64,000 bases of DNA from IMG/VR virus record IMGVR_UViG_3300032053_000002, positions 124,001 through 188,000 of that record; one strand, given 5' to 3'. The notes under the pieces are model-generated. The model was not told the DNA's origin. It worked only from the letters and a program-made list of their open reading frames with translations, and did no database searches. Each line of letters begins with the position of its first letter. Positions within the stretch are counted from its first letter, which is position 1. Both the position numbers and the translations under genes were made by a program. Shown piece by piece: positions 20,905 to 64,000 of this stretch.

Positions 20905-21702
20905 CTATTTTTGTTTTCCTACCCAAATATAAGTATCACCTTTGAATTTAAGAGTCTTATGCTCAGAAACTTCAAATTTTGTTTTTAATAAGTCTAATAA
21001 ATAATACTTTCTATCACAATCATCTTTACTACGATTTTCAAAAATATTCATAGTCAAATAAACGTTATTCGAATACGAAAGTATGGAATCGAAGAAAAAC
21101 TTTGTAGCCGAAACATTCATTTCGGATAAACAATAATCACTGATAGTCAAATAACTTTCTTTTTTTTCGACACTGTCAGACGAATTAAATATAACATTGT
21201 TTAAATTAAATTTACTCAGGTATTTTTTAGATAACTCTATTGCTTCAGGCATATCAACCAATCTATACGAATTAAATTTGTATACGCAACTAGTTATTAG
21301 GCATTGACCACCATATGCAGAACCTATTTCGGTTATATCTTTATTATTTAAGTCGCCAAAATGTTTTCCTAAATCCCCAACAACTTTTATATAGCGCGTT
21401 GTATTTGGCGAAAATTTACCGAATTTTTCATATTCGTATATTGGAGGAGAACCATGTATATCATTCTTTCTAAACTCGTCGAAGTGATTTATTAAATATG
21501 GATATTCTTTTTCAATATAGGTAAGGAATTGTTTTCCTCTTTCAATTCCATGGCTATCACACCCAACAATTTGTATGTATTCTCGTAATCTTTTAAATGA
21601 TGAAAATGTTTCTTCATTTACGGCGGCTTCCTTACAAATTTTTGTATATGGTTCTGCGAATCTTCGTTCAAGCATCCAATGTCCCTTTACTGTGATAGTC
21701 AT
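20905..21702 (-). CDS. Putative sugar O-methyltransferase
   Basis: SAM motif ITEIGSAYGGQ; RY..VVGDL; LVDMPEA. Confidence 0.7.
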   Translation of the reverse strand: MTITVKGHWMLERRFAEPYTKICKEAAVNEETFSSFKRLREYIQIVGCDSHGIERGKQFLTYIEKEYPYLINHFDEFRKNDIHGSPPIYEYEKFGKFSPNTTRYIKVVGDLGKHFGDLNNKDITEIGSAYGGQCLITSCVYKFNSYRLVDMPEAIELSKKYLSKFNLNNVIFNSSDSVEKKESYLTISDYCLSEMNVSATKFFFDSILSYSNNVYLTMNIFENRSKDDCDRKYYLLDLLKTKFEVSEHKTLKFKGDTYIWVGKQK

Positions 21703-21703
21703 T

Positions 21704-23317
21704 TTAATTATCCTTCTTTAATTTGCTTACTAAAAGTTTCAATTCATAAAAATATAAAAAATCAATTTGAGTTTTTAAAAAACATTCGATGGCATCTTTT
21801 GGAGTTTCAACAATAGGCTCTCTATCGTTAAAACTGGTATTCAATATTAAAGGGATTCCGGTTTTTTCTTTCCATTTTTTTAAAAAATTATAATACCATT
21901 TATTGTCTTTTTCTGTTACGGTTTGTATTCTCGCCGAACCGTCTGCGTGAACTACTGCCGGAACTTTGTTTTTCATATCTTCTTTAAATTTAACAACGAT
22001 AGACATATATGGACTGTCTACATCTCTAACAAACCAATCTTCTACGTCTTCTCTCAAAATACTCGGAGCAAAAGGGCGAAACCACTGGCGATGTTTTACT
22101 TTTTCATTTACTTTATCTTTCATTTTTATGTCGCGAGGATCGGCAAGAATACTTCTATTTCCCAGTGCTCTTCTTCCGGTTTCAGATTTTCCACCATATA
22201 CGGAAATTATTTTTTGGTTATTCAATAAATCAATGGCTTCTTCATCATTTGAATTCCGTGATTCGATGTTGCTATATTGTTTAATAGATTTAAAAACGTC
22301 CGAATCAGGATAAGAATACCCCAAATACGGAGTGAAATTATCTTTCCAGAATATTCGAGGATTGTTGTTGATATGATGCCAAAAGTATTGAGCGGAGCCG
22401 ATGGCGCACCCAGAATCAGCTGGGGTTGGTGATACGTATATTCCGTCAACGTTGGGAAACCAATCATAAAGTTTCCCGACCATAACGGAATTAAGAGCCA
22501 CCCCTCCGGCCAAGCATAAGAATGTTGGGTTGTATTTTTCAATATAGGGCGACAATGTTTCTCGAATTAAAATTTCTGTATATTTTTGAAGCGCCGCGGC
22601 GACATCAAATTTATATTGCTCATTCTGCTGTATAAGTTCTCGAAGTGCTTCACGCGATATAGGAATTTCTTGAGTTACATTTTTGAAAAATCTTTCCGGG
22701 TCTCCAAACGCAGACATTGCCATAACCGTTCCTTCCTGAGATCCAATCGGATACCCGACAGACAACCCGAATACCTGACTCGTATATTTCTGCCATATCT
22801 CTCCGATATTTGGGTCTCCCTGAAATATTTTGATGGGGTATATTTTATTATCCACACCTGCCCAAATAGTAAATCCGGAAACTTGTTTACAAATACCACC
22901 GTCTTCGCCATTATGAAATTCGTCGCCACCACCATCCATCGTAATAATTAACGCATTTTTATAATTGGAAGAAAAAAACGCATTCGCTGCATGAGATTTA
23001 TGATGCCCAATACCATAACTGGGATTAGTTCCCGGGTCTCCATAAAAGTTAGCTATTTTTTCAGCTTTTTCATACGTATCAGGGTATCGTTTTTTAATTC
23101 CGCCGTGCCATGTCATAACAGGATGAGTAAATGCGTTTATATCACTATAATATGGATATACATTAAACATGAATTCAATAGAATCGGAAACTTTCATCTT
23201 CTCTCGCGAAAATCTTTCCAACTCGTGATGAACGGTCGGTATTCCATTTTCTAATATTGCAAATGAGCAATCATGCCCGCTAAGAAGTCCGCATATTTTC
23301 ATTTCTTTTATCTCCAT
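21704..23317 (-). CDS. O-carbamoyltransferase (CmcH/NodU/TobZ family)
   Basis: GHDCS, HHKSHA, GGVALN, GRRALGNRSILADPR, RPFAPS, LNTSFN. Confidence 0.92.
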   Translation of the reverse strand: MEIKEMKICGLLSGHDCSFAILENGIPTVHHELERFSREKMKVSDSIEFMFNVYPYYSDINAFTHPVMTWHGGIKKRYPDTYEKAEKIANFYGDPGTNPSYGIGHHKSHAANAFFSSNYKNALIITMDGGGDEFHNGEDGGICKQVSGFTIWAGVDNKIYPIKIFQGDPNIGEIWQKYTSQVFGLSVGYPIGSQEGTVMAMSAFGDPERFFKNVTQEIPISREALRELIQQNEQYKFDVAAALQKYTEILIRETLSPYIEKYNPTFLCLAGGVALNSVMVGKLYDWFPNVDGIYVSPTPADSGCAIGSAQYFWHHINNNPRIFWKDNFTPYLGYSYPDSDVFKSIKQYSNIESRNSNDEEAIDLLNNQKIISVYGGKSETGRRALGNRSILADPRDIKMKDKVNEKVKHRQWFRPFAPSILREDVEDWFVRDVDSPYMSIVVKFKEDMKNKVPAVVHADGSARIQTVTEKDNKWYYNFLKKWKEKTGIPLILNTSFNDREPIVETPKDAIECFLKTQIDFLYFYELKLLVSKLKKDN

Positions 23318-24311
23318 TTATCATATAATATTTTTTCCAATATTCGATCATTTCATCTAACATTTCTTCAAATGTTATTTCCGGTTTCCAACCCGTAGCA
23401 TTTCTTAATTTGGTCGAGTCTCCCCGTAGTTCATTTAGTTCTTCAGGTCGTAAATATTTTTTATCAATTTTAACATAATTTTTCCAATCCAATCCTAAAG
23501 ATGCAAATACATATTCGAGCAATTCCTTAACTGAATGAGATACACCGGTGGCACAAACAAAATCATCTGGACTATCTTGTTGTAAAATTAACCACATGGC
23601 TTTGGCATAATCTTTTGCGTGTCCCCAATCTCTTTTTGCATCAATATTTCCGAGGACTAACTCGTTTTCCAATCCAAGTTTTATTTCTGTAGCTCTCTTA
23701 ACAATTTTATTAGTGACAAAATTAGTTCCTCGAACAGGCGATTCATGATTAAATAAAATTCCATTTGATGCGAATAATTTATATGAATGTCTATAATTTC
23801 TTGTAATATTATACGCAAATAATTTCGAGCATCCGTATGGACTTACTGGATTTTTTGGCGTTGTTTCTCGCTGAAATCCATCACTATCAATATTGTTTCC
23901 AAACATTTCGCTTGAGCTCGCCTGATAAAATTTCGCGTTAGGAGTGATTAATTTAATGGCTTCTAATAAGTTCAACGTTCCTATCGCATTCGTCTGTGAC
24001 GTATAAATAGGTTGGTCGAAACTTATTCTAACATGAGATTGCGCCGCGAGATTATAAATTTCGTCGGGCCGTGAATCTTGTAATACACGAATTAGCGAAG
24101 ACATATCCGTCATGTCACCATAAACAAGTTCTAATTTTTTATGTAATTCTTTTTTAAACAGATCTTGTAATCTAGATGTTTGATTTTCGGCGACAGAATT
24201 TCTTTTTACTATTCCCCAGACTTTATAATTTTTTTCTAATAAGAATCTCGCTAAATAGCTTCCGTCCTGACCACCGGCACCAGTGAGGAACGCGACTTTT
24301 TTTATTCTCAT
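23280..24311 (-). CDS. gmd: GDP-mannose 4,6-dehydratase
   Basis: TGAGGQDGSYL, YNLAAQSHV, QASSSEMFG, SPYGCSK, FNHESP.RG..FVT.KI. Confidence 0.95.
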   Translation of the reverse strand: MRIKKVAFLTGAGGQDGSYLARFLLEKNYKVWGIVKRNSVAENQTSRLQDLFKKELHKKLELVYGDMTDMSSLIRVLQDSRPDEIYNLAAQSHVRISFDQPIYTSQTNAIGTLNLLEAIKLITPNAKFYQASSSEMFGNNIDSDGFQRETTPKNPVSPYGCSKLFAYNITRNYRHSYKLFASNGILFNHESPVRGTNFVTNKIVKRATEIKLGLENELVLGNIDAKRDWGHAKDYAKAMWLILQQDSPDDFVCATGVSHSVKELLEYVFASLGLDWKNYVKIDKKYLRPEELNELRGDSTKLRNATGWKPEITFEEMLDEMIEYWKKYYMINGDKRNENMRTS

Positions 24312-25522
24312 ACGGAAACTCCTTTATATCTATTTAATATATTACAGATATATTCAACGTCTTCGTCGTTCATTTCGGGATGATTGGGGACGTAAAATCC
24401 GAATTGGTCGGCTTTGTTGGCGTTATATAGTAATTTGTTTCCATATTTTTGAATGTACATCGGCTGAGTACCCATTGAACCGCATATCAGGGGTCTGGTT
24501 TCCACTCCGGCGTCAATTAAATCATACGTGATAGCGTATTTCATCGGATGAATAACAGGATACGCGAAGTTTGAAACAAAAGTATCGTTTAATGGCTTGG
24601 GTTTCCATCCAGGCAAATTTGGAACGTTTTCTTTCCAGATAAGATTTTGATATGTATTAAAATTTTTATTTCTGATTTCAACATTTTTATTAAGTTTTTT
24701 GAGTTGTAGTAATCCAAGTTTAGCATTTAAATCGGTTGACCTTAAATTAAATCCTGGATGATAAAAAGTCAGAAGCGCATCAAAATTATTTACATTCCAA
24801 TGTTTTCTAAGTAGATTTCTTTTTTCTTCTGGCAAATCCCTGTCCCATCCATGGCTTCGCAACATTAATAACATATGATATAAATCTTCGTCGTTTGTAT
24901 TCACAAATCCGCCTTCAATGGTCGAAATATGATGTCCGAAATAAGTTGAATATGTGCTGGCGATACCAAAATTGCCTAAATGTTTACCATGATATTTTGT
25001 TCCCATTGATTCACAGTTATCCTCAATCAAATCGACATGGTATTGTTTAGAAATATTTACGAGCTTATCCATATTTGGCGAAAACCCAAGAACCGAAACA
25101 GAAATAACGGCGACTATATGGTTGTCGTTTTCTAAGATTGTGGCTAATTGATCTAAATCAAGTGTTAAATCATCCATATTACAATCAACCAACACGGGCT
25201 TAAATCCAAGTTGTATAACCGGTGATAAGTCTGTCGCCCAAGAAATTGCGGGGACAACCACTCTAGCATTTCCGTCATAAAATTTTGCATACGCACTATT
25301 TTTACTTAATAAAGATAACGCGTACAATAAAAGAAGATTCGCGGACGAACCACTATTTACAAACACCGAATATTTAGTTCCGATATATTTTGCCCATTCA
25401 GATTCAAGTTGAACAGTTAGTTCACCTTTGGTCAACCTCGGAAATGTTTTTAACCATTCAATTAATTCGTCAATATCTTGTTTGTCAATTGTATCATTTA
25501 TTAATGCAATTTTTTTCATCAA
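24308..25522 (-). CDS. colD: PLP-dependent GDP-4-keto-6-deoxymannose 3-dehydratase (ColD-like)
   Basis: EDNCESMG; YFGHHISTIEGG has His where DegT aminotransferases have Lys; LRSHGW; adjacent to gmd. Confidence 0.75.
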   Translation of the reverse strand: MMKKIALINDTIDKQDIDELIEWLKTFPRLTKGELTVQLESEWAKYIGTKYSVFVNSGSSANLLLLYALSLLSKNSAYAKFYDGNARVVVPAISWATDLSPVIQLGFKPVLVDCNMDDLTLDLDQLATILENDNHIVAVISVSVLGFSPNMDKLVNISKQYHVDLIEDNCESMGTKYHGKHLGNFGIASTYSTYFGHHISTIEGGFVNTNDEDLYHMLLMLRSHGWDRDLPEEKRNLLRKHWNVNNFDALLTFYHPGFNLRSTDLNAKLGLLQLKKLNKNVEIRNKNFNTYQNLIWKENVPNLPGWKPKPLNDTFVSNFAYPVIHPMKYAITYDLIDAGVETRPLICGSMGTQPMYIQKYGNKLLYNANKADQFGFYVPNHPEMNDEDVEYICNILNRYKGVSV

Positions 25523-26222
25523 TAATCCCTTTCTTTTTCATATCATCAATTATATCCTGTGATAATGTTCTGTTATCATTGATTAAATTAAAATTTAGAG
25601 GCAGGTCAAGTCTTCCTCGTCTTATAGCCTGACATGGTTGAATGACATAATCTCTATATGTCGCCAATATTTTATATCCGTCATTTCTCGCGGCATTAGA
25701 CCCGTATATTTCAAATTCCCATGGCGACCAACCGGGTAATATATATTTTAATAAATATTTTCTATTCCATATCGACCACATTGCCGATAATCGGTAATCA
25801 ACGTTGGGGCGATTAATTATAACATCAAATCCCACTTGCGAACTACAAAAATCAAATGGTCGTAATTTACCATCATTCGTTAAACAAAATCTGCCCAACT
25901 CATCTGTTAGATAGTTTCCAATTATGTGATTATATATAAAAAAATTAACCGGTTGCATAATGAATTGATCTTCTGTTGCCCATACAAAAAATTCATCATC
26001 AATCGACTCAAAAAAAATTTTCAAATCCGTTGACCACATTTGTATTCCACCGGTTTGTTTTCCCATAGAAACAAATGTAAAATTACTCGGTAAATTAAAT
26101 TCGGGCGCATCATACCCCAAAATGGTCACTGATGCGGTTGTACTCCAAAACCTGTTAAACAAGTAAGAAAACACTTTTATTAAAGGCAAACATTGGTCGG
26201 CAGTTGAAATATAAATCTTCAT
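25494..26222 (-). CDS. Putative glycosyltransferase-like protein
   Basis: VWATEDQF (DxD-like), WSIWNRKYL, SPWEFE; island context. Confidence 0.45.
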   Translation of the reverse strand: MKIYISTADQCLPLIKVFSYLFNRFWSTTASVTILGYDAPEFNLPSNFTFVSMGKQTGGIQMWSTDLKIFFESIDDEFFVWATEDQFIMQPVNFFIYNHIIGNYLTDELGRFCLTNDGKLRPFDFCSSQVGFDVIINRPNVDYRLSAMWSIWNRKYLLKYILPGWSPWEFEIYGSNAARNDGYKILATYRDYVIQPCQAIRRGRLDLPLNFNLINDNRTLSQDIIDDMKKKGIIDEKNCINK

Positions 26223-27484: not shown

Positions 27485-27490
27485 AACGAA

Positions 27491-30358: not shown

Positions 30359-30360
30359 TT

Positions 30361-46757: not shown

Positions 46758-46760
46758 TTT

Positions 46761-56896: not shown

Positions 56897-57097
56897 TTAT
56901 TTCCCGTTATTTATTATCGTATCTTTAATTATTTTCGCGCAACTAGAACACAAATCATATTTATCCGTTTTACGTCCACTTGGAGTTAAATAAGATTCGT
57001 ATGTAAACGTTCCCGCCAACTCTCTCGATATGTCGTTTGAAAGATAACCTCGTTCAATTATTTCTTTTTTACACATATCACAATAATGTTTTATCAT
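56897..57097 (-). CDS. Small zinc-binding protein
   Basis: CDMC...CSSC. Confidence 0.65.
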   Translation of the reverse strand: MIKHYCDMCKKEIIERGYLSNDISRELAGTFTYESYLTPSGRKTDKYDLCSSCAKIIKDTIINNGK

Positions 57098-58041: not shown

Positions 58042-58682
58042 TTGGCTTCCAATATTTTACTATATTTTTGGTTTTGTTCTATTTGTCGCCAGAGAGTTTT
58101 AACGTGTTTTATGGCGACATATTCGGTCATATCCATTTCAAACGGCAAAAATGCGTGATTTTTGTATCCGGTAAGTCTTTCGTGCACTTTATTTATCCAG
58201 CATATTCGCGGATAATCTTTTTTAAAAACCCGCTGTTGCGGATCCGGCCAGTTTACCCAACCTTTTTCGTTTACGCGAAACCCAAATCTTTGCGCCCATT
58301 CTGGCGTAAGTCCCTCAACAATGTTAACGCGCGGAAGCCACAGACATTCAGCTTTGTTTTGTTCGATGATAAGATGTATATTTTCTAAGAGATAATCAGG
58401 AAAAATCTCGTCCGCATCTGGATTTAATATGTAGTCGCCAACGCATTTTTCTATCATAAAGTTTTTTTGAGCCGCATAATCATTATTGAGATGTCGTTGA
58501 TAAACTTTAACTCCCCTTTCTGCCTGATGATAACCGAGAATCCCCGCCGTTCCCTGATTATCAGAATAATCATCTATGATCACAACCTCATATTCATAGT
58601 CGCGATGTTTTAATAGGGAATCTAATAGTTTTTGTAAACTATCCGTTTCGTTATGAACGAGTATGCCAAATGATATTCTCAT
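58038..58682 (-). CDS. GT2-family glycosyltransferase
   Basis: ISFGILVHNE, IDDYSD, QKN, DADE, VHE. Confidence 0.85.
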   Translation of the reverse strand: MRISFGILVHNETDSLQKLLDSLLKHRDYEYEVVIIDDYSDNQGTAGILGYHQAERGVKVYQRHLNNDYAAQKNFMIEKCVGDYILNPDADEIFPDYLLENIHLIIEQNKAECLWLPRVNIVEGLTPEWAQRFGFRVNEKGWVNWPDPQQRVFKKDYPRICWINKVHERLTGYKNHAFLPFEMDMTEYVAIKHVKTLWRQIEQNQKYSKILEAK

Positions 58683-58981
58683 AATGTATATTGTAATAAG
58701 TTTATCGGTTTCACTGTGATTTCATTAGTATTGTCGTTATATGATTTTAGCAAAAAGTTTCCTGCCCATAGACTGTTATCCTTCCCATAAAAATATAATG
58801 GTATATAGTTATTTTTATGATCTATTCTATTTTTTATGGATGTTGGGATCAGTTTTTTAAGTTTGACGGTGACTTCATTCCATTCAATGCGGTCGTGTGA
58901 ATGTTTTGGGTCAAAAATAAAATCTGTTTCAACCATCCCAAGTTGATAATCAAACTCATATGGAAACATATAATATTCCAT
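58679..58981 (-). CDS. Hypothetical protein
   Basis: 100-aa ORF in tiled operon. Confidence 0.6.
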   Translation of the reverse strand: MEYYMFPYEFDYQLGMVETDFIFDPKHSHDRIEWNEVTVKLKKLIPTSIKNRIDHKNNYIPLYFYGKDNSLWAGNFLLKSYNDNTNEITVKPINLLQYTL

Positions 58982-59000
58982 TATTTACCTCTTTTTATAT

Positions 59001-59207
59001 TTATTTTTCCTTTACTACAGGTTTCGCCATTGGCTGCGACATGACCCAGTTCATAATTTTATCCACGTCCAACTTCTTATTTTTTTCTTCTTTGTAATAA
59101 TCTAGCCAGGCTCTCATCCACGCAAACTTATCTTCGTTTCTTCCGCGGCGCAACATTTCGTCAAATAACTCGCCATCGTTAAATAATTTTAATAGTTTTT
59201 CTTTCAT
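59001..59207 (-). CDS. Hypothetical protein
   Basis: 68-aa ORF, AAGGAG RBS. Confidence 0.65.
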   Translation of the reverse strand: MKEKLLKLFNDGELFDEMLRRGRNEDKFAWMRAWLDYYKEEKNKKLDVDKIMNWVMSQPMAKPVVKEK

Positions 59208-59224
59208 GGTAAACTCCTTTTATT

Positions 59225-59416
59225 TTATTGTTCTCTAAATTCTACGGTGGTTGTTTTTTTAACTTTTCCGATATTAACTAATTGATATACCGCGACATCA
59301 ACACCATCATCGTAACCATCAACATCATTGTCAGCGATATAATAATCACTATCATTCGCATCACTACCTCTCATAACATACAATTCGTTTGGAAATTCTA
59401 CTTTTTTGTTTTTCAT
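59225..59416 (-). CDS. Hypothetical protein
   Basis: 63-aa ORF. Confidence 0.65.
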   Translation of the reverse strand: MKNKKVEFPNELYVMRGSDANDSDYYIADNDVDGYDDGVDVAVYQLVNIGKVKKTTTVEFREQ

Positions 59417-59434
59417 AACTCGTTTTCCTTTTTT

Positions 59435-59929
59435 TTAAGTTTTTGATTTTAAGTCGTTAGGCATATTTTCGTCCAACCCAGAATAGAAATCTTTATAGTG
59501 ATAATATATCAGGCGAAGATTTGTTATACCGCTTACTTTATATGTTCTATAAGGCGAATCGCCTTCACTGAAATGTAATCTAATAAATGGTTTTAATTCG
59601 TTGTCGTAAAACCTTCGTGGGTCTTGTATAGTTGCTTTCAATAAAGGAAGTCGCAAATGCAATAACTTCTGCAATCTTTCTGTTTTGGTCTCTTTAATTA
59701 TGTCGTGTAGTTTAATCAATACTCTATCACTAACATAATCTAACACTACCCCATGTAAATAACTTCTCCAGTCCGGATTTAATATTAAAACAAGCGGGCG
59801 TTTTATATGAGATCTGTCGCCAGAATAGTTAAACCGAACAATCTGCCCGGCCTCCAATTTCGTTCTCAGAACAACATTTTCAGAAAGTATGTTTCGCTGG
59901 TGGAATCCTGTCCAAACCTTATTAGGCAT
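59435..59929 (-). CDS. Hypothetical protein, possibly T4 gp2-like DNA end protector
   Basis: GQIVRFNY...RPLVL...HGVVLDY resembles the gp2 F.Y...PL...G.NLHY core; start set at MPNKV behind AAGGAG. Confidence 0.35.
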   Translation of the reverse strand: MPNKVWTGFHQRNILSENVVLRTKLEAGQIVRFNYSGDRSHIKRPLVLILNPDWRSYLHGVVLDYVSDRVLIKLHDIIKETKTERLQKLLHLRLPLLKATIQDPRRFYDNELKPFIRLHFSEGDSPYRTYKVSGITNLRLIYYHYKDFYSGLDENMPNDLKSKT

Positions 59930-59939
59930 TTTTGTCTCC

Positions 59940-60461
59940 TTATTGTGTTTCGTTTGGTTTTTTCGACATAAAATCTTCTTCGGGCAAAATCGCGCCCATT
60001 TCGATAAGAGCATCGTAGAATCTCGTGAATCTTTTAGCGCTGTTAGGATTTATTCTATTTTCATAATATTTATTTTTACTGTTTGGAATTGGAAAGTTGA
60101 TTCTTTCATTCTCCGGTATAATTTCTATCGGCGCGTATACCCATATTATATTCGTCTTAGTTCCTTCTGGAAAAAGTATTCCTTTGGACGGCATATTGAT
60201 AACGGTCGGGATCCACCAAATAAATCTAATGTTGTCGTATTCTCGAAAACCGATTATCAATTTTGGCGATGTATTTATTACCTGCCGAAATTCTTTAGAA
60301 TTTTTCTTCCAGGTCGAGTTTGAAGTGTATCCGCAATTTATACATAACCAGGTTTTAATTTTATCAAAGTCTTCTTCTAGTGCGGAATACTTATTACATA
60401 CCGGACAATAATCCGTTTTTCCTGACAACGGAATAAAGTTATTACTTCTGTCATTTTCCAC
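59940..60461 (-). CDS. Hypothetical protein with N-terminal zinc ribbon
   Basis: CPVC...CINCGY. Confidence 0.7.
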   Translation of the reverse strand: MENDRSNNFIPLSGKTDYCPVCNKYSALEEDFDKIKTWLCINCGYTSNSTWKKNSKEFRQVINTSPKLIIGFREYDNIRFIWWIPTVINMPSKGILFPEGTKTNIIWVYAPIEIIPENERINFPIPNSKNKYYENRINPNSAKRFTRFYDALIEMGAILPEEDFMSKKPNETQ

Positions 60462-60636
60462 CCGAATCTCCTTCTCGTTTTTTTAATATTATAGACATAT
60501 AAATTCTTTCCAATTTTTTGTAAGGCAAGTTCGCTAAAGTTTCCCCATATTTCTCTAACTCGCCGTCAAAATATTTTTTTCGTATTTCAATTAATTCGGT
60601 GAACATTTTTATTCTATCTGTTTCATTCGTTTCCAT
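60451..60636 (-). CDS. Hypothetical protein
   Basis: 61-aa ORF overlapping both neighbours. Confidence 0.55.
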   Translation of the reverse strand: METNETDRIKMFTELIEIRKKYFDGELEKYGETLANLPYKKLERIYMSIILKKREGDSGGK

Positions 60637-62134
60637 TATTTTTCTCCAATGCGGGTTCCCCCATTTTATCAGGTTCTTCCATTCTAGGAAGACTTATTTT
60701 CATTGTGTCTTCTTTCGCCGCCTCATTACTTCCCGCCGCAGGTTCTTCTGCATTTAATCTTTTCAATTTAGGCAAAATAATGTTTTTTTGCAGGTCTGGC
60801 GAAGATATATCTTCTATACCGCTTATTTTTCTAAGTTTTGGTAAATTAGGTAAACTGATAGATACTTCACTCGGAAATTCTGGTAAATACTTGTTTAATA
60901 TTTCTTCAAATTTTTTCTTCATTTTTTCTCTTGTAAATCTGGCTTCATTTATCGCTCCCAACTTTTTAGCGTTTAATTCATATTTTTGATAATTTCTATG
61001 CACATCTTTCATCGCAGCGATTGCGTAACCATAATTTACAGTAAACCATTTTGATTCTTTAACTATGACCCCTTCCCATACCGCCGATTTGTGTACATCC
61101 GTTATTTGTCCTGGAAGTAATACTGATAAATCCTTATTGAGAAAATCCATTTGCCCAGACCAACCACTCGCTATAATAGGTTTCCCGCTTATAGATGCTT
61201 CTAGTAAAGGTCTTCCAAATCCTTCCCCCTTAGTAAAAGAAATATGAACTTTTACTTTTGGATGATTATACAGAGCATTCATTTCCTCGTCAGTTAATTC
61301 TCCATGTAATAGATATATCGGTGGGTGAGTATTGACATCAGTTCCTATTGATGACTTTATAGAATTTATTTTCATCGTAAGTTCTTCTCTATCCATAACA
61401 GAAAATCCCGCTCCGCTCGTTTTTAGAATCAACCCGGGAGGATTTTTTTCATCTTTAAAAGCGTCTATAAAAGTTTTTAATAGCATACCAACATCTTTTC
61501 TATCCTGACCGATGTCGCCTTTTAGCCAGTGTCCAACAAATAGAAAATTAAAAGTGGTATGAATTTCTTTCATTTTATCCGCAATCGGCTTTGGATATTC
61601 GTCGATTTTCGATAGGCGACGATATATTTTCGAGTTAAATCCTTCAAATAAAACTTCTATTGGTTTTTCGCATTTTAGTTGTTTGACTGGTTGGTTGTTT
61701 TGATCTCGTTGAGTCCAAACCGTAGTAGTAAAAACATTTTTAGCGTGTTCGGACGGGACAATGTTCAAATCCATTCGATTCAATCCCATAATCCAATCCG
61801 CCGAACACATTGTCGTTTCTATTCCGGCCGTTATTCCTATATTAAATTTTGCAATAGTTTGATATTCATTCGGCACTACTAAATGAACGTGAATGTCGGG
61901 AGTTTTATTTAATGGTTGATTCATATTTATTAACCGTTGAATAATTGGAATGTGATCCGGATTGTCGATCTTTAATGCGTTTCTTGGGGTGCTTCCCCAG
62001 CGAACATCTCCGATTTTTATATCAAACCTATCCATCTCAATTAATGCGTTCGCAATATCTACGGCATGGCTACCATAACCACTGCGAGTTCCAACTGGCG
62101 CGGTCATTATCAAAAAAGGTTTGCTTTTGCCCAT
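60623..62134 (-). CDS. GT4-like (GT-B) glycosyltransferase
   Basis: GYGSHA, FLFVGHW, TKGEGFGRPLLEAS..GKPIIAS. Confidence 0.85.
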   Translation of the reverse strand: MGKSKPFLIMTAPVGTRSGYGSHAVDIANALIEMDRFDIKIGDVRWGSTPRNALKIDNPDHIPIIQRLINMNQPLNKTPDIHVHLVVPNEYQTIAKFNIGITAGIETTMCSADWIMGLNRMDLNIVPSEHAKNVFTTTVWTQRDQNNQPVKQLKCEKPIEVLFEGFNSKIYRRLSKIDEYPKPIADKMKEIHTTFNFLFVGHWLKGDIGQDRKDVGMLLKTFIDAFKDEKNPPGLILKTSGAGFSVMDREELTMKINSIKSSIGTDVNTHPPIYLLHGELTDEEMNALYNHPKVKVHISFTKGEGFGRPLLEASISGKPIIASGWSGQMDFLNKDLSVLLPGQITDVHKSAVWEGVIVKESKWFTVNYGYAIAAMKDVHRNYQKYELNAKKLGAINEARFTREKMKKKFEEILNKYLPEFPSEVSISLPNLPKLRKISGIEDISSPDLQKNIILPKLKRLNAEEPAAGSNEAAKEDTMKISLPRMEEPDKMGEPALEKNNGNE

Positions 62135-62137: not shown

Positions 62138-62344
62138 TTATTTCCTCATAAGTTTTAATTCATTCAATAATTGTTTTTGTTTTGCCTTCCCACCCGATAT
62201 TTCTCTTTTCAGATAAATCCAATGGTCATCCTTAAACATAACTTCCCAACCGTTCAACCCGGCCGCATTTAATCTAATTATCAAATCCTCCGGTTCAATA
62301 ACGCTGGCAATAATATCTATTTTTTTATACTCAAACTCCTTCAT
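62138..62344 (-). CDS. DUF4177-like small protein
   Basis: FEYK...LNAAG.NGWE...YLKRE. Confidence 0.55.
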   Translation of the reverse strand: MKEFEYKKIDIIASVIEPEDLIIRLNAAGLNGWEVMFKDDHWIYLKREISGGKAKQKQLLNELKLMRK

Positions 62345-62814
62345 TTTTTCAACCCCCTTTTTGCTGAAAGTTTCCCGTTCCCTTCAATGAAATCTTTATT
62401 CCATAATGAAGGATTTTTTCTTATTTTAAATTTTTCGCCCGTTTTGGTATCTTTTATGACAATGTTTTCCGGTTCCGTTTTTTCAACTGCCGCGATTGCT
62501 TTTTTTACCACATCATCTTTTACTCCATAACGCAACCGTAAAAGATTTTTAACGTTACGAAAAAAATTCTTGATTTTAGTTTTTAGTGAAGGTTTGAGCA
62601 TTTCAATTTCAAGATCATTTGGTGTATTTTTCTTCCTCTTCAAAGAACTTGCTGATGCGGGTTTTGATGCGGATATGAACCCGGTTCCCCATTTTTCATC
62701 AATATCAAAAATTTCAAAATTCGAATCGAGAGATTCTAGCGCCGATTTCTTTTTCGGTCGCGGTTTTGTTTGTGTGCTAATTTTCTTTTTGGTACTCATT
62801 TTGTTTCCTCCCAT
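62341..62814 (-). CDS. Hypothetical basic protein
   Basis: 157-aa ORF; start probably MSTKK. Confidence 0.6.
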   Translation of the reverse strand: MGGNKMSTKKKISTQTKPRPKKKSALESLDSNFEIFDIDEKWGTGFISASKPASASSLKRKKNTPNDLEIEMLKPSLKTKIKNFFRNVKNLLRLRYGVKDDVVKKAIAAVEKTEPENIVIKDTKTGEKFKIRKNPSLWNKDFIEGNGKLSAKRGLKK

Positions 62815-64000
62815 TTAGTCGCGAATTCTTTTTGAAAATCCGATATTCCGAAAGATTCGGCGACAAATTTTATTTTATCATCCACTGGTTTTATTTCAAA
62901 AATATCAAATCTTTTTCTCGATTTAAAATTTTCAAAAGTGATGTCTATAAAATCCATAAAATTCTTACCCATCATTTCAGACGTCATTCCACATTTAATT
63001 AAATATTCTCGCCCTTCCAATCCACGCTTATCTCTTTCCTCTTTGGGCACGTCATACCAGTATTTTATCGCAACCGCCGCATCGTACCAGTCGCATCTAT
63101 CGTCAAAAATGTATGGCGTTGGAGGCGACCCAACTAGTGCACGATTAGTCGGGAACAGTGGTCTTACCCAACTACCGTGTTTTTTATATTTTCCATCGTG
63201 ATTTGAACCCCATTCCGAATTGAAGTGCTTATCGGGATCGATGTATTCTCCGTTCTCATCGACAAATCCCATTTGATCCTGTAATCCTCCAGTAACCGTT
63301 GCTATAATAGGTTTCCCGACCATAAGAGATTCGCAAGTAGATAACCCGAAACCCTCGTTTGACGCCATGTTGATTGTCACATCGCAAACATTGTATAAAT
63401 AATTTAAGTATTTTGGCTCTAGCCTATCATTAGAAAAGATTAGATTTATATCAGGTGCAACTGCACGTTTAACCGCAATCAAATCCGTTCCATTTTCGTC
63501 TATTGGTTGAGTATGCATGACCAACGCAACTTTTTTTCGTTGTTCTTCGGTTAGCATATCAGTGAAGCATTTAAATGCTAAAATCACATCACCCGGCATT
63601 TTTCTGCGAATATTTCTATTATTGTAAAATACAATGAAATCAAAATCTCTTTCCTTAAAAATCTTTTTTCTGAAATCTCGTAATTCTTCGTATTCATTAG
63701 TGATTTTAACGGTTTCGGTTTTTTTATCTTTTATTTCGAAACTTTCTTCGGGAGATGATAAGCCGAGAGGTTTAAAGTTTATATGATCTACTCCGTGTGG
63801 TAAGTATCTTAGCGCCCAAGATTCAAGAGGCAATCTTTTTCTTGATTGTTTGACTATGTTGTATGTCTGTTTGCTAATACACCCAACACTGTCACATGAT
63901 TCATAATAATCCTGATTATACATTGGAATCGGAACATCGTCCCATATCGCGTAAAATGACAATGGTATGTATTGCCGTATTTCGTGTTCCATCTGATATA
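62796..64000 (-). CDS. GT4-like (GT-B) glycosyltransferase, 5' end beyond the window
   Basis: NRNIRRK, SNEGFGLS..ESL..GKPIIA; frame is open to the window edge (TAT CAG ATG). Confidence 0.85.
   Translation of the reverse strand, partial: YQMEHEIRQYIPLSFYAIWDDVPIPMYNQDYYESCDSVGCISKQTYNIVKQSRKRLPLESWALRYLPHGVDHINFKPLGLSSPEESFEIKDKKTETVKITNEYEELRDFRKKIFKERDFDFIVFYNNRNIRRKMPGDVILAFKCFTDMLTEEQRKKVALVMHTQPIDENGTDLIAVKRAVAPDINLIFSNDRLEPKYLNYLYNVCDVTINMASNEGFGLSTCESLMVGKPIIATVTGGLQDQMGFVDENGEYIDPDKHFNSEWGSNHDGKYKKHGSWVRPLFPTNRALVGSPPTPYIFDDRCDWYDAAVAIKYWYDVPKEERDKRGLEGREYLIKCGMTSEMMGKNFMDFIDITFENFKSRKRFDIFEIKPVDDKIKFVAESFGISDFQKEFATKWEETK

What the first reader, a model, noticed from the sequence alone, without database searches (positions are those of the whole stretch)
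20905..64000. Phage-encoded glycan factory of more than 40 kb with no membrane assembly or export genes
Seen: about 10 NDP-sugar SDRs, 2 PLP 3-dehydratases, a TPP E1 pair, 2 B12-radical SAMs, 4 SAM-methyltransferase domains, a carbamoyltransferase, a deacetylase and up to about 15 GT or GT-like genes (GT-A, GT-B, GT-D-like). All are co-oriented and lack TM segments, and the only membrane proteins are under 100 aa. No Wzx, Wzy, Wzm/Wzt, WecA/WbaP or GtrA/B-type gene is present. Known: bacterial O-antigen/capsule loci and serotype-converting phages need lipid-carrier and flippase functions, whereas chloroviruses, mimiviruses and some mycobacteriophages glycosylate virion proteins with their own soluble GTs. 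Inference: a cytoplasmic assembly line that builds a complex, heavily decorated glycan on the virion (or on DNA), on a scale like giant eukaryotic viruses. It could serve shielding, receptor mimicry or anti-defence.
Basis: partly seen in the sequence, partly recalled or inferred. Interest (0 to 1): 0.85.

Follow-up and report, generated by a model that had tools for sequence, protein, structure and literature searches.

The report
Giant sugar-building island in a jumbo phage
A 293-kb T4-like phage carries a 43.5-kb block of about 50 sugar-making and sugar-attaching genes with no membrane export machinery; it is an extreme expansion of a glycan locus that thousands of aquatic phages share, and whose target (probably the virus particle) has never been tested.

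Summary
Window 20905-64000 (true end 64424) is one co-oriented block of about 52 ORFs. It has 10 NDP-sugar SDRs, two PLP 3-dehydratases with His in place of the catalytic Lys, a split ThDP E1-like pair, two B12-radical SAM enzymes, three methyltransferase domains plus one candidate, a carbamoyltransferase, a CE4-like deacetylase and at least 11 glycosyltransferases. Only three ORFs of 61-96 aa are hydrophobic. No Wzx, Wzy, ABC, WecA/WbaP or Gtr gene was found in the 156 kb inspected.

The contig is a phage: IMGVR_UViG_3300032053_000002, 292,723 bp, with gp23 capsid, T4 baseplate, gp32, PolB and gp44/62 genes.

The island is not a one-off. A colinear core (GT-B, GT-B, Zn-ribbon protein, GT2) follows the replication genes in two cultured phages (hosts Microcystis and Flavobacterium) and in at least 600 viral contigs. 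Among 185,579 species genomes it occurs only on phage-like MAG contigs. The payload behind the core differs from phage to phage; here it is 5-6 times larger than in the cultured relatives.

A phage-encoded acceptor, most likely a virion protein, is the best reading but is not shown. DNA is disfavoured and host-envelope remodelling remains open. The kind is known: the "LPS" clusters of T4-like cyanophages.

The parts
62796..64000 (-). Core GT-B1. GT1/GT4-like, cut by the window end; the full gene is 62796-64424, 537-542 aa.
   Evidence: Pfam Glycos_transf_1. Orthologs at 43-63% identity, in the same position, in Mel-JY01, immuto, L013 and L014. Present in 73 of 80 IMG/VR loci.
62138..62814 (-). 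Two small ORFs (157 aa basic, 68 aa) between the core GTs. Function unknown.
   Evidence: No Pfam or PHROG match. Relatives also have small ORFs at this place.
60623..62134 (-). Core GT-B2, a retaining GT4-like glycosyltransferase of 503 aa.
   Evidence: AF2 model pLDDT 84.6. Best PDB hit is chlorovirus B736L (3OY2), E 5e-16, followed by GT4 enzymes. At least 8000 metagenomic homologs. Among species genomes, found only on phage-like MAG contigs.
59940..60461 (-). Core 173-aa protein with an N-terminal CxxC...CxxC zinc ribbon.
   Evidence: Four invariant Cys in alignment A3. Homolog in the same slot in L013, L014 and immuto, and in 48 of 80 loci.
58679..60013 (-). Small ORFs of 192, 63, 68 and 100 aa. 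Function unknown.
   Evidence: No family match. The 192-aa ORF has a 40% identical homolog in L013.
58038..58682 (-). Core GT2, a soluble GT-A of 214 aa.
   Evidence: Pfam Glycos_transf_2, 1e-20. Best PDB sequence matches are GmaR, TarS, GalT1 and SunS. Present in 62 of 80 loci.
57094..58041 (-). 315-aa conserved protein of unknown function.
   Evidence: 72% identical in L013, where it sits next to the E1 dehydratase. 134 representative homologs. No PDB or Pfam match; only a weak hhalign match to the C-terminal half of a GT-B.
55927..56895 (-). dTDP-glucose 4,6-dehydratase (RmlB).
   Evidence: TIGR01181, 424 bits, above the 365 cut-off.
54862..55908 (-). GT-B, GT47/GT90/RXYLT1-like, 348 aa.
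   Evidence: Atlas feature and structure matches, TM 0.6-0.9, to viral and bacterial Glyco_trans_1_2/RXYLT1_C clusters. 50-64% identical in L013 and L014.
53529..54836 (-). E1-type NDP-4-keto-6-deoxyhexose 3-dehydratase (RfbH/AscC-like).
   Evidence: RfbH model, 341 bits. Alignment to 3BCX shows His at E1 His220, and the four Fe-S cysteines are kept.
52834..53532 (-). RmlD-like short NDP-sugar reductase, 232 aa.
   Evidence: Pfam RmlD_sub_bind, 2e-17. The same gene pair with the dehydratase occurs in huge phage LR756502.
51434..52837 (-). B12-binding radical SAM enzyme, likely a C-methyltransferase.
   Evidence: Pfam B12-binding plus Radical_SAM. Nearest NCBIfam models are HpnJ, PhpK and the RiPP C-methyltransferases.
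50479..51441 (-). FkbM-family SAM methyltransferase.
   Evidence: Pfam Methyltransf_21, 5e-18; TIGR01444 above cut-off.
49701..50477 (-). 258-aa protein of unknown function.
   Evidence: No match in Pfam, PHROGs or PDB.
48523..49699 (-). Split minimal ThDP enzyme: an E1alpha-like PP domain (49073-49699, 208 aa) plus an E1beta-like Pyr domain (48523-49059, 178 aa).
   Evidence: Pfam E1_dh 3e-16 and Transket_pyr 3e-8; NCBIfam PDH E1 alpha and beta, both below cut-off.
41344..48554 (-). Run of six SDRs: 47559-48554 Fcl-like, 46761-47534 weak, 45608-46570, 44435-45424 4,6-dehydratase-like, 43435-44472 epimerase-like, and 41344-42261 Fcl-like. Interleaved with a 61-aa hydrophobic ORF (46572-46757), a GT (42666-43433) and a 140-aa unknown ORF.
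   Evidence: Pfam Epimerase and GDP_Man_Dehyd. NCBIfam GDP-fucose synthase-like. PHROG 14945 glycosyltransferase for 42666-43433. Hydropathy scan.
40534..41319 (-). 261-aa protein of unknown function.
   Evidence: No match anywhere.
39665..40423 (-). CE4 (NodB-fold)-like carbohydrate deacetylase or esterase.
   Evidence: AF2 model pLDDT 88.3. The top 20 PDB hits are all CE4, best E 3.7e-7. Invariant H42-D43, H95 and H100. More than 540 homologs, none with a Pfam domain.
38307..39668 (-). Two-domain protein: SAM methyltransferase plus a GT8-like glycosyltransferase.
   Evidence: Pfam Methyltransf_24 7e-9 at the N-terminus and Glyco_transf_8 1e-3 at the C-terminus.
36802..38310 (-). 91-aa hydrophobic ORF (38035-38310), DUF5662 protein (37602-38057), and a GT8-like paralog (36802-37614).
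   Evidence: Hydropathy scan. Pfam DUF5662, 3e-37. 30% identity over 194 aa to the GT8-like half of 38307-39668. 43% identical in L014.
35861..36628 (-). NUMOD3 homing-endonuclease-like gene inserted in the island. It is not a glycan gene.
   Evidence: Pfam NUMOD3 x2, 6e-17. It is preceded by the largest gap of the island (36629-36801, 173 nt), which holds an ATATTTATA motif.
31530..35859 (-). GT-A (34831-35859), 129-aa unknown ORF, PseB/CapD-like UDP-HexNAc 4,6-dehydratase (33532-34455), GT4-like GT-B (32564-33541), 61-aa ORF, and GT2 (31530-32366).
   Evidence: Atlas. Pfam Polysacc_synt_2 5e-55 and TIGR03589 PseB 177 bits, below cut-off. Pfam Glycos_transf_2.
29782..31561 (-). 108-aa ORF, weak VWA-domain protein (30361-31086), and two small ORFs. 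Their role in glycan synthesis is doubtful.
   Evidence: Pfam VWA, 1e-5, below cut-off.
28586..29785 (-). GT2 of 399 aa. This is the conserved GT that closes the locus in the cultured relatives.
   Evidence: Pfam Glycos_transf_2. 42% identical to immuto WcaA-like gp169 and 24% to the Mel-JY01 COG1216 GT.
26219..28583 (-). Short SAM methyltransferase (28158-28583), 96-aa hydrophobic ORF, 127-aa ORF, and the second B12-radical SAM enzyme (26219-27484).
   Evidence: Pfam. Hydropathy scan. NCBIfam B12-rSAM families.
25494..26222 (-). 242-aa conserved protein of unknown function.
   Evidence: 54% identical in L013; also present in L097 and L104. No family match.
23280..25522 (-). GDP-mannose 4,6-dehydratase (23280-24311) plus a ColD-type GDP-4-keto-6-deoxymannose 3-dehydratase (24308-25522).
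   Evidence: TIGR01472, 417.6 bits, above the 415 cut-off. Best PDB match is ColD (2GMS), 3e-60, with His at His188.
21704..23317 (-). NodU/CmcH-type O-carbamoyltransferase.
   Evidence: Pfam Carbam_trans_C 7e-64 and Carbam_trans_N 2e-19.
20905..21702 (-). 265-aa protein, the last gene of the island. A possible methyltransferase fold (weak).
   Evidence: Homologs sit inside the glycan loci of L013 (40%) and LR756502 (28%). Only E~0.5 PDB matches to methyltransferases.

Best explanation
This is an expanded, lineage-specific glycan locus of a T4-like jumbo phage.

Shown:
- A colinear, phage-restricted core follows the replication module (PolB, clamp loader, ClpP, PD-(D/E)XK nuclease, YAcAr). The core is GT-B1, GT-B2, a Zn-ribbon protein and a soluble GT2.
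- The core is followed by a payload of sugar-tailoring genes and extra GTs that differs between related phages.

Inferred from the enzyme families:
- The payload takes primary NDP-sugars from the host pools, because no nucleotidyltransferase is encoded.
- GDP-mannose is converted to a colitose-like 3,6-dideoxyhexose by Gmd, a ColD-type dehydratase and Fcl-like reductases.
- dTDP-glucose is converted to 3,6-dideoxy, C-methylated and possibly two-carbon-branched hexoses. The enzymes are RmlB, an E1-type dehydratase, an RmlD-like reductase, B12-radical SAM enzymes, FkbM and the split ThDP enzyme.
- UDP-HexNAc is converted to 6-deoxy-HexNAc derivatives by the PseB-like dehydratase and further SDRs.
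- Methyl and carbamoyl groups are added, and acetyl groups are removed.
- At least 11 soluble GTs assemble the sugars on the cytoplasmic side.

Inferred and not shown: the acceptor is phage-encoded, most likely one or more virion proteins. Each phage lineage would then display its own surface glycan, in the way O-antigens vary among bacteria or fibril glycans among Megavirinae clades.
For: Viral backbone: gp23 MCP (53% identical to Mel-JY01), T4_baseplate, gp32, PolB and Phage_clamp_A. The contig is in IMG/VR. Independent assemblies are identical. GC matches the backbone.

Enzyme identities.

No membrane machinery: hydropathy scans and Pfam over 156 kb.

Conserved core with variable payload:
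- Mel-JY01 has a locus of about 7 kb and immuto one of about 11 kb, in the same slot and order.
- L013 and L014 carry different payloads, including NeuB, CTP_transf_3 and a formyltransferase.
- In 80 IMG/VR loci the core genes are present in 48-80 loci and each payload gene in 1-28.

Phage restriction: 23 loci in 185,579 species genomes, all on MAG contigs. All 19 with enough flank carry further core genes in the same order; four contigs are too short to tell.

The cultured hosts belong to different phyla, Microcystis and Flavobacterium.

The best structural match of GT-B2 is a chlorovirus GT, not a DNA GT. The GT2's nearest solved relatives glycosylate proteins, peptides or teichoic acid.

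No glycosylated nucleoside was reported in immuto DNA (PMC10516641).
Against: - No glycan on any virion of this clade has been shown.
- The locus lies about 60 kb from the capsid gene and next to DNA-metabolism genes, unlike the mycobacteriophage GTs, which (from my own recollection of PMC10527164, not read here) sit beside the capsid genes.
- Undecaprenyl phosphate is also common to all bacterial hosts. Conservation across host phyla therefore does not exclude a lipid-linked acceptor handled by host enzymes.
- About 47% of the contig (record 1-95 kb and 252-293 kb) was not inspected.
- Several ORFs of 240-315 aa and three small hydrophobic ORFs in the island have no assigned function.
- The E1-type dehydratase needs a reductase partner, and none was found.
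- Substrate assignments come from family membership, not from assays.
Confidence: 0.5

Rival explanations
1. Host-envelope remodelling. The soluble phage enzymes build a new oligosaccharide on a host undecaprenyl-phosphate-linked primer. Host initiating transferase, flippase and ligase then export it. This changes LPS, EPS or the S-layer glycan of the infected cell, for superinfection exclusion, to stop progeny adsorbing to debris, or to avoid grazers.
For: This is the standing hypothesis for the 'LPS/CWSM' clusters of T4-like cyanophages (PMC1079782, PMC12801897). In bacterial O-antigen loci most GTs are also soluble. The sugars predicted here (3,6-dideoxyhexoses, 6-deoxy-HexNAc) are typical O-antigen sugars. 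Kyanoviridae islands share the RfbH-like and RmlB genes at 44-55% identity.
Against: No initiating, flipping, polymerising or ligating gene was found in 156 kb (and the Pfam lists). The core GT family is absent from isolate bacterial genomes. It is conserved at 44-64% between phages of Cyanobacteria and Bacteroidota, whose envelope glycans and Wzx specificities differ. The phage would depend on relaxed host flippase and ligase specificity in every host.
Confidence: 0.25
2. DNA hypermodification. The core GTs glycosylate a modified base in phage DNA and the payload diversifies the glycan. This would protect against restriction and CRISPR, as in T4 and in the 5hmC-glycan clusters.
For: The locus sits at the end of the replication module and is always linked to a PD-(D/E)XK nuclease and usually to a YAcAr (SLOG) protein. 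In this phage dCMP deaminase, two DNA N6/N4 methyltransferases and a Macro domain lie between them. Phage GT-A and GT-B enzymes are known to put mono- to trisaccharides on DNA (bioRxiv 10.1101/2023.12.21.572611).
Against: No thymidylate-synthase-like hydroxymethylase, TET/JBP dioxygenase or C5-methyltransferase was found in the 156 kb inspected (Pfam lists). T4 alpha/beta-GT are not among the 50 best structural matches of GT-B2. LC-UV-MS of immuto DNA reports only dA, dC, dT and fdPreQ1. At least 11 GTs and three sugar pathways far exceed any known DNA glycan.
Confidence: 0.12
3. Another cytoplasmic acceptor. The product would be a soluble oligosaccharide or glycosylated small molecule, or a glycan put on a host protein. 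The deoxysugar tailoring set (E1-type dehydratase, B12-rSAM C-methylation, ThDP branching, carbamoylation) resembles antibiotic sugar pathways.
For: The nearest structural relatives of GT-B2 include enzymes that act on small soluble acceptors: BshA, MshA, sucrose-phosphate synthase and TreT. The tailoring enzymes match families used in natural-product sugars (the AviB1/B2 and YerE parallels come from my own knowledge and were not tested).
Against: No aglycone-forming genes (PKS, NRPS, terpene) and no exporter were found. A conserved core with a hypervariable outer part is the pattern of a displayed surface glycan rather than of a metabolite.
Confidence: 0.08
4. Non-functional cargo ('stuffer' DNA for headful packaging), a cellular fragment, or an assembly chimera.
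For: The 'stuffer' idea was raised for cyanophage LPS clusters (PMC3037559).
Against: The ORFs are intact, tightly packed and overlapping. The catalytic His and the Fe-S cysteines are kept. Orthologs are conserved at 40-72% across phages. GC equals the backbone. The same sequence was assembled three times and spans both junctions.
Confidence: 0.02

Closest known systems
[quoted passage not shown]
   Same: A T4-like backbone with clusters of NDP-sugar SDRs, DegT enzymes and many soluble GTs in a plastic region, and no assigned function. RfbH-like and RmlB homologs are shared at 44-55% identity.
   Different: Those clusters have 22-24 genes and at most 13 GTs; 13 was reported as possibly the highest in a marine phage. 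This island has about 52 ORFs in 43.5 kb. It adds two 3-dehydratases, two B12-rSAM enzymes, a split ThDP enzyme, a carbamoyltransferase and a CE4 enzyme. The three-GT core found here had no tblastn match in Kyanoviridae records; only Mel-JY01 and immuto matched.
[quoted passage not shown]
   Same: The same slot after PolB, clamp loader and PD-(D/E)XK. The same order (GT-B, GT-B, GT2 ... closing GT2), with orthologs at 24-48% identity. The capsid is 53% identical to that of Mel-JY01.
   Different: Their loci are about 7 kb and 11 kb. Mel-JY01 has no NDP-sugar tailoring genes. Immuto has an aminotransferase, an acetyltransferase and an epimerase instead of the deoxysugar set.
Glycosylation gene clusters of giant viruses (chlorovirus capsid N-glycans; Megavirinae fibril glycans; the CroV 38-kb cluster)
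   Same: Virus-encoded soluble GTs plus NDP-sugar pathways for bacterial-type rare sugars. Multidomain GT-methyltransferase proteins. Clade-specific cluster content. Comparable size: 6-33 genes in Megavirinae and 34 ORFs in 38 kb in CroV (PMC9614988). The best structural hit of GT-B2 is chlorovirus B736L.
   Different: Here the host is bacterial and the virus is tailed. There is no sequence-level orthology. Glycosylated virions are demonstrated there and not here.
Bacterial O-antigen loci for 3,6-dideoxyhexoses (colitose: Gmd-ColD-ColC; Salmonella/Yersinia rfb: RfbH/AscC; yersiniose with ThDP-dependent branching)
   Same: The same enzyme chemistry: a 4,6-dehydratase, then a PLP/PMP 3-dehydratase with His replacing Lys, then a reductase or epimerase. 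A ThDP enzyme sits next to the dideoxy pathway. The yersiniose and avilamycin AviB1/B2 parallels come from my own knowledge.
   Different: There is no nucleotidyltransferase, no E3 reductase, and no Wzx/Wzy/Wzz or ABC transporter. The ThDP enzyme is a split, shortened E1alpha/beta pair rather than a YerE-type enzyme.
Mycobacteriophage virion glycosylation (Freeman et al. 2023, PMC10527164, as cited in PMC12619734)
   Same: Phage-encoded soluble GTs thought to act in the cytoplasm on capsid and tail-tube subunits.
   Different: In those phages one or two GTs lie next to the structural genes and there are no sugar-tailoring pathways; this description comes from my own recollection of the paper, which I did not read here. 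In this phage more than 11 GTs lie about 60 kb from gp23.
Phage DNA-glycan biosynthetic clusters (T4 alpha/beta-GT; C5-MT/5mYOX or ThyS plus GT, with or without an epimerase)
   Same: GT-A and GT-B enzymes, with sugar epimerases, close to DNA-metabolism genes.
   Different: No base-hydroxymethylating enzyme was found. The known products are at most trisaccharides. The structural matches are not DNA GTs. The relative's DNA shows no glyco-nucleoside.

Membership tests
Bacterial O-antigen / capsule locus (Wzx/Wzy- or ABC-dependent) | NDP-sugar synthesis genes plus several glycosyltransferases in one co-oriented cluster | tested here: met
   10 SDRs, 2 dehydratases and at least 11 GTs.
Bacterial O-antigen / capsule locus (Wzx/Wzy- or ABC-dependent) | Initiating polyprenyl-phosphate transferase (WecA/WbaP/PglC type) | tested here: not met
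   No Glycos_transf_4 or Bac_transf hit. No protein over 100 aa in the island has hydrophobic segments typical of membrane proteins.
Bacterial O-antigen / capsule locus (Wzx/Wzy- or ABC-dependent) | Flippase and polymerase (Wzx, Wzy, Wzz) or ABC exporter (Wzm/Wzt), and a ligase | tested here: not met
   None in the island or in the 156 kb inspected. There is no multi-TM ORF apart from a 1198-aa protein among the baseplate genes and small 3-4-TM ORFs without Pfam. 47% of the contig was not inspected.
Bacterial O-antigen / capsule locus (Wzx/Wzy- or ABC-dependent) | Located on a cellular chromosome | tested here: not met
   The contig carries gp23, T4_baseplate, gp32, PolB and gp44/62 and is in IMG/VR.
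Serotype-converting phage modules (GtrABC, O-acetyltransferase) | GtrA (4-TM flippase), GtrB (GT2 with C-terminal TM helices) and GtrC (polytopic GT) | tested here: not met
   The GT2 proteins lack TM segments. There is no GtrA Pfam hit, including for the 153-aa 4-TM ORF about 41 kb beyond the island's downstream end (window 20905).
Glycan ('LPS/CWSM') islands of T4-like aquatic phages | T4-like structural and replication core genes on the same genome | tested here: met
   Pfam Gp23, T4_baseplate, gp32, DNA_pol_B, Phage_clamp_A and DnaB_C. PolB is 30-32% identical to Kyanoviridae and pelagiphage PolB, and 44% to Mel-JY01.
Glycan ('LPS/CWSM') islands of T4-like aquatic phages | A block of sugar epimerase/dehydratase, transferase and synthase genes without export genes, variable between related phages | tested here: met
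   for the known islands; for variability in this clade.
Glycan ('LPS/CWSM') islands of T4-like aquatic phages | Cyanobacterial host and photosynthesis AMGs (Kyanoviridae sensu stricto) | tested here: inconclusive
   No psbA or hli was seen in the 156 kb inspected. The nearest cultured relative infects Microcystis and another infects Flavobacterium. The host of this phage is unknown.
Phage DNA glycosylation clusters | A base-hydroxymethylating step (dCMP/dUMP hydroxymethylase, or C5-MT plus 5mYOX/TET) encoded with the GT | tested here: not met
   No Thymidylat_synt, TET_JBP or C5 DNA_methylase in the Pfam lists for record 95-252 kb. Only N6_N4 methyltransferases and dCMP deaminase are present.
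Phage DNA glycosylation clusters | Glycosylated nucleosides in virion DNA | not testable with these tools
   Literature only: DNA of immuto, which carries the homologous core, gave dA, dC, dT and fdPreQ1 (PMC10516641).
Virus-encoded virion glycosylation (chlorovirus, Megavirinae, mycobacteriophage) | Soluble virus-encoded GTs and virus-encoded NDP-sugar pathways, with content specific to the lineage | tested here: met
   comparison with PMC9614988.
Virus-encoded virion glycosylation (chlorovirus, Megavirinae, mycobacteriophage) | Glycan covalently attached to capsid, fibre or tail proteins | not testable with these tools
   This needs glycostaining, glycoproteomics or cryo-EM of virions. Cultured relatives exist.
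PLP/PMP-dependent sugar 3-dehydratases (ColD, E1/AscC) | His replaces the Schiff-base Lys of DegT aminotransferases; for E1, four Cys ligands of a [2Fe-2S] cluster as well | tested here: met
   Residue-level alignments to 2GMS/3B8X/2R0T and to 3BCX/3BB8 (wild type versus H-to-K/N mutants).
CE4 carbohydrate esterases/deacetylases (for 39665-40423) | NodB fold with an Asp-His-His metal triad | tested here: inconclusive
   The fold matches: the top 20 PDB hits are CE4, E 4e-7, but TM is only 0.42-0.56. Invariant H42-D43, H95 and H100 fit the triad. No Pfam Polysacc_deac_1 hit.

The most novel reading that the evidence does not exclude
A clade-wide 'virion O-antigen' system. A phage-restricted core of two GT-B enzymes, a Zn-ribbon protein and a GT2 primes a conserved phage structural protein. 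A hypervariable, mosaic payload then builds lineage-specific surface glycans. In this phage the payload is more than 35 kb and would include colitose-like and branched or C-methylated 3,6-dideoxyhexoses with carbamoyl and methyl decorations. Tailed aquatic phages would then have a serotype-like diversity layer comparable to bacterial O-antigens and giant-virus fibrils. It could be tested directly in two cultured phages.
Probability: 0.4. Interest if true: 0.9.

Novelty: new variant of a known kind. Interest (0 to 1): 0.7.

Why it matters
Large aquatic phages have been known since 2005 to carry 'LPS' gene clusters, and their function is still open. Suggestions in the papers read here range from host-surface change and DNA glycosylation to stuffer DNA.

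This window holds the largest phage glycan cluster I could find in the papers and records searched. More usefully, it exposes the architecture: a conserved, phage-only GT core with a payload that varies from phage to phage. That architecture is shared by at least 8000 metagenomic protein clusters and by two cultured phages.

This turns the open question into an experiment: virion glycoproteomics, nucleoside LC-MS and host LPS profiling in Mel-JY01 and immuto, with core-GT knockouts.

If the acceptor is the virion, tailed phages would have serotype-like glycan diversity. That would bear on host recognition, defence evasion, particle stability and aquatic carbon chemistry. The island would also be a compact source of soluble enzymes for rare deoxysugars.

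Tried and rejected
- Megablast of 44 kb of the window against GenBank phages gave no hit.
- PHROGs gave almost nothing for the left part of the window or for the dark island ORFs.
- Pfam at E up to 10, single-sequence PDB searches, and one profile search left six ORFs of 240-315 aa unexplained.
- The exact-protein look-up of the last gene failed because the window end cuts it.
I found gp23 by walking instead.
- The T4 late-promoter consensus TATAAATA is not over-represented overall (13 found, 12 expected). A different motif, ATATTTATA, marks the structural genes, and only one copy lies in the island, so timing could not be settled.
- The 'moraphage' jumbo-phage paper (PMC12619734) was considered as the source lineage and rejected. 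Those phages fall outside the T4 group, though they also have core GTs.
- The small hydrophobic ORFs were considered as GtrA- or SMR-type flippases. They have two hydrophobic segments rather than four and no Pfam match.
- The SPFH protein (16214-17284) was considered as membrane machinery. It is a Band 7 protein.
- A GtfA/GtfB-like pair for the two core GT-Bs was considered. GtfA was not among the 50 listed PDB matches (the table is truncated; 484 matches had E <= 0.001).
- A tRNA-like stretch near 16.1 kb is only a T-arm fragment.

Full report
**1. What the window is.**
All sizeable ORFs of the 64-kb window lie on the - strand, and GC is 0.31-0.42. Megablast against GenBank phages found nothing.

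Exact-protein look-ups and an IMG/VR scan place the window at bases 124001-188000 of JGI contig Ga0315284_10000017, which is IMGVR_UViG_3300032053_000002 (292,723 bp). Identical sequence occurs in an ENA assembly (168,695-bp contig) and in Logan contigs.

Walking along the contig, plus IMG/VR fetches, gave 156 kb in total (record 95-252 kb). Going upstream from the island, I found:
- dCMP deaminase, two N6/N4 DNA methyltransferases, a Macro-domain protein, a GT_PLOD-like GT, YAcAr, a PD-(D/E)XK nuclease and ClpP;
- Phage_clamp_A, the AAA clamp loader and family-B DNA polymerase;
- dUTPase and a class II RNR;
- a DnaB-type helicase, a 5'-3' exonuclease, two RecA-like proteins and gp32;
- a divergent PolA, large structural-size ORFs, T4_baseplate and a gp23 major capsid protein.

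The capsid protein is 53% identical to that of the cultured Microcystis phage Mel-JY01, and PolB is 44% identical. The island's GC (0.338) equals that of the backbone (0.349 and 0.358). The ENA contig spans both junctions. So the contig is a T4-like jumbo phage, and it is neither a cellular fragment nor a chimera.

**2. The observation.**
The block 20905-64424 holds about 52 ORFs. It has only four gaps of 60 nt or more, and many start and stop codons overlap. The inventory in the observation check is confirmed. Points that needed more than Pfam:
- Both DegT proteins are dehydratases. The alignments to E1 (wild type 3BCX against the H220K mutant 3BB8) and to ColD (2GMS against the H188N and H188K mutants) put a His of the phage proteins at the critical position. 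The E1-like protein also keeps the four cysteines of the Fe-S site.
- Gmd and RmlB pass the NCBIfam equivalog thresholds.
- Three Pfam-negative ORFs are GT-B or GT-A folds according to the Atlas. One ORF matches a PHROG GT. One is a paralog of the GT8-like half of the methyltransferase-GT fusion.
It has no Pfam hit, but a confident model (pLDDT 88) whose 20 best PDB matches are all CE4 enzymes. His-Asp, His and His are invariant.
- The hydropathy scan shows that only the 61-, 91- and 96-aa ORFs are membrane-like. A single hydrophobic stretch in the ThDP protein lies within the stretch that Pfam matches to ThDP-binding domains (residues 102-172); I read it as buried core rather than a TM helix (inference).
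- No NTP_transferase domain is present.
- A NUMOD3 homing-endonuclease gene, a DUF5662 gene and a weak VWA gene are passengers.

**3. The island is an expansion of a conserved phage locus.**
This is the main new result.
- In Mel-JY01 the same gene order is found: PolB, clamp loader, PD-(D/E)XK, and then a GT cluster of about 7 kb. Its members are orthologs of window 62796-64424 (43%), 60623-62134 (45%), 58038-58682 (33%) and 28586-29785 (24%), in that order.
- The cultured Flavobacterium phage vB_FspM_immuto has PD-(D/E)XK, GT, GT, a 152-aa ORF and a GT2. These are followed by aminotransferase, methyltransferase, mannosyltransferase, acetyltransferase and epimerase genes, and a closing WcaA-like GT that is 42% identical to 28586-29785.
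- Two metagenomic relatives show the same core with other payloads. L013 shares RmlB, the 348-aa GT, the E1 dehydratase, and the 315-, 242- and 265-aa unknown proteins, at 40-72% identity. L014 instead carries a GXM-like methyltransferase fusion, a formyltransferase, a CMP-sugar synthetase, NeuB and a carbamoyltransferase. It also carries the CE4-like and GT8-like genes found here.
- In 80 IMG/VR loci fetched through GT-B2, the counts are PD-(D/E)XK 71, GT-B1 73, GT-B2 80, GT2 62, the Zn-ribbon protein 48 and YAcAr 47. Each payload gene occurs in only 1-28 loci.
- GT-B2 has at least 8000 protein clusters as homologs, many from Tara samples at 53-58% identity.
- In one genome for each of 185,579 bacterial and archaeal species it occurs only 23 times, always on MAG contigs of incoherent taxonomy. 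All 19 with enough flanking sequence carry further core genes in the same order; four contigs are too short to tell. I read these as mis-binned phage contigs.

So the core is phage-restricted, and the payload is mosaic and hypervariable. In this phage the payload is 5-6 times larger than in the cultured relatives.

**4. Likely chemistry.**
This part is inferred from family membership; nothing was assayed.
- Route 1: Gmd plus the adjacent ColD-type dehydratase, with one of three GDP-fucose-synthase-like SDRs, would give a GDP-colitose-like 3,6-dideoxyhexose. The neighbouring carbamoyltransferase and B12-rSAM/methyltransferase genes suggest decoration of that sugar or of the glycan.
- Route 2: RmlB, the E1-type dehydratase and the RmlD-like reductase would give a dTDP- or CDP-3,6-dideoxyhexose. 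A B12-radical SAM enzyme and FkbM follow directly, then a 258-aa unknown ORF and then the split ThDP pair. This suggests C- and O-methylation and two-carbon branching at the 4-keto stage. The parallel is yersiniose (YerE) and the avilamycin AviB1/AviB2 pair, which I cite from my own knowledge and did not test. No E3-type reductase was found, so host ferredoxin systems or an unrecognised ORF would have to supply electrons.
- Route 3: the PseB/CapD-like enzyme with further SDRs would give 6-deoxy-HexNAc sugars. No aminotransferase or NeuB is present.
- The primary NDP-sugars must come from the host.

**5. Where the glycan goes.**
There is no lipid-carrier, flippase, polymerase, ligase or ABC gene in the island or in the 156 kb inspected. 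The only larger hydrophobic proteins are an SPFH protein, a 1198-aa protein among the baseplate genes, and small 3-4-TM ORFs without GtrA or other Pfam matches.

Several points argue for an acceptor that the phages bring themselves:
- The core GTs are absent from isolate bacterial genomes.
- They are conserved at 44-64% between phages of Cyanobacteria and Bacteroidota.
- GT-B2's best structural match is chlorovirus B736L, then GT4 enzymes; T4 alpha/beta-GT are not in the top 50.
- The GT2's closest solved relatives are GmaR (flagellin), GalT1 (serine-rich adhesin), SunS (peptide) and TarS/TarP.
- For DNA as the target, no hydroxymethylase, TET or C5-methyltransferase was seen.
- Published LC-UV-MS of immuto DNA shows dA, dC, dT and fdPreQ1 only (PMC10516641).

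Against the virion reading:
- Nothing has been measured.
- The locus sits with DNA-metabolism genes and is always linked to a PD-(D/E)XK nuclease.
- Undecaprenyl phosphate is universal too.

My estimates are: virion or other phage protein 0.5, host envelope through host machinery 0.25, DNA 0.12, other cytoplasmic acceptor 0.08, junk or artefact 0.02.

**6. Timing.**
The region downstream of the island (window 1-20 kb) is full of TTGACT-N17-TATAxT promoters in front of small ORFs, an early-gene pattern. The motif ATATTTATA is strongly intergenic (10 of 21 copies, against 1.4 expected). Nine of those ten copies precede genes in the structural-gene region. The tenth lies in the island at 36747, ahead of the endonuclease gene and the distal half of the island. 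This hints at some late transcription, but one site is not enough to conclude.

**7. Comparison with what is known.**
- Large T4-like cyanophages carry 'LPS' or 'CWSM' clusters. P-SSM2 has 24 genes. S-SCSM2R has 22 genes, including 13 GTs that its authors call possibly the highest number in a marine phage. Their function is unknown, and 'stuffer DNA' has been suggested (PMC1079782, PMC3037559, PMC12801897).
- S-H68 has an island of about 17 kb with homologs of RmlB and the E1-type dehydratase.
- Giant-virus clusters range from 6 to 33 genes, and CroV has 34 ORFs in 38 kb (PMC9614988).

The island therefore belongs to a known kind. It is the largest example I found, it has an unusual enzyme set, and it reveals a conserved-core, variable-payload organisation that I did not find described in the papers I searched.

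**8. Limits.**
- 47% of the contig was not inspected.
- Six mid-size ORFs and the three hydrophobic mini-ORFs remain unassigned.
- Substrate and product names are family-level inferences.
- The host is unknown.

Noticed in passing
window 730-1167, 12306-12731, 12728-13219; L001 16905-19871 (just beyond the window start): A multi-copy paralog family of proteins of about 140-170 aa (27-38% identical). It includes a tandem array of five to six copies downstream of the window. No Pfam match.
   Followed up: partly
window gaps 3426-3603, 4912-5011, 6375-6469, 7443-7903, 19957-20039: Near-consensus sigma70-type promoters (TTGACT, about 17 nt, TATAxT) in front of small ORFs. TTGACT is intergenic 18 times against 3.7 expected over 146 kb. 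This looks like the early, host-takeover region of the phage.
   Followed up: partly
window 36747; L258 upstream of 2363, 8146, 8468, 11977, 14732, 15846: The motif ATATTTATA is strongly enriched between genes (10 of 21 copies, 1.4 expected). It sits upstream of the gp23 operon, T4_baseplate and other genes in the structural-gene region, so it is a candidate late promoter. One copy lies inside the island.
   Followed up: partly
window 35861-36628 and 20040-20570: Two homing-endonuclease-like genes. One is a NUMOD3 protein inserted in the middle of the island, preceded by the island's largest gap (173 nt). The other is a 176-aa homolog of the immuto HNH endonuclease, at the island's downstream edge.
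   Followed up: partly
window 8505-8579 and about 16115-16131: One tRNA-His. A separate fragment resembles a tRNA T-arm and acceptor end, but ARAGORN and Rfam do not call it as a gene.
   Followed up: yes
window 1173-3425, 3604-4911, 30361-31086: A MoxR/CobS-like AAA ATPase and a 750-aa protein form a pair that is conserved in Mel-JY01 and adjacent in the 484-kb huge phage LR756508. A weak VWA-domain protein, a usual partner of MoxR ATPases, sits inside the glycan island.
   Followed up: partly
window 16214-17284: An SPFH/Band 7 membrane protein (PHROG 200) with N-terminal hydrophobic segments. It is the only larger membrane protein in the window and is unrelated to glycan export.
   Followed up: yes
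L257/L258 (record about 232-236 kb): L257 6386-9982: A 1198-aa protein next to T4_baseplate has about nine hydrophobic segments and no Pfam match. It may be a tape-measure or ejection protein.
   Followed up: no
L282 12450-12911 and 14108-14437 (record about 101.5-103.5 kb): Small membrane proteins of 153 aa (four hydrophobic segments) and 109 aa (three). They have no Pfam match, GtrA included. They lie about 41 kb beyond the island's downstream end (window 20905), near RNA ligase 1, a PNK-like HD/AAA_33 protein and UDG.
   Followed up: partly
L010 12768-14270; L258 1950-2177; L257 1005-2102; L256 6325-7668: Other unusual cargo on the same phage: a PAS-HisKA-HATPase-REC hybrid sensor kinase, a ribosomal protein S21-like ORF, a lysine-2,3-aminomutase-like radical SAM gene on the opposite strand, and a divergent PolA (of the 'divPolA1' kind described for immuto-like phages) alongside the regular PolB.
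   Followed up: no
L003 1761-2549 (window-equivalent 69586-70374) and L255 16472-17473: Two further GT-like genes outside the island: a GT_PLOD-like protein of 262 aa between YAcAr and the DNA methyltransferases, and a faint GT1-like protein of 333 aa upstream of PolB.
   Followed up: no
window 29-131: The intergenic gap contains a short tandem GGAGC(G/T)-type repeat (GGAGCGGAGCTGGAGCGGAGCTGGAGCGG).
   Followed up: no
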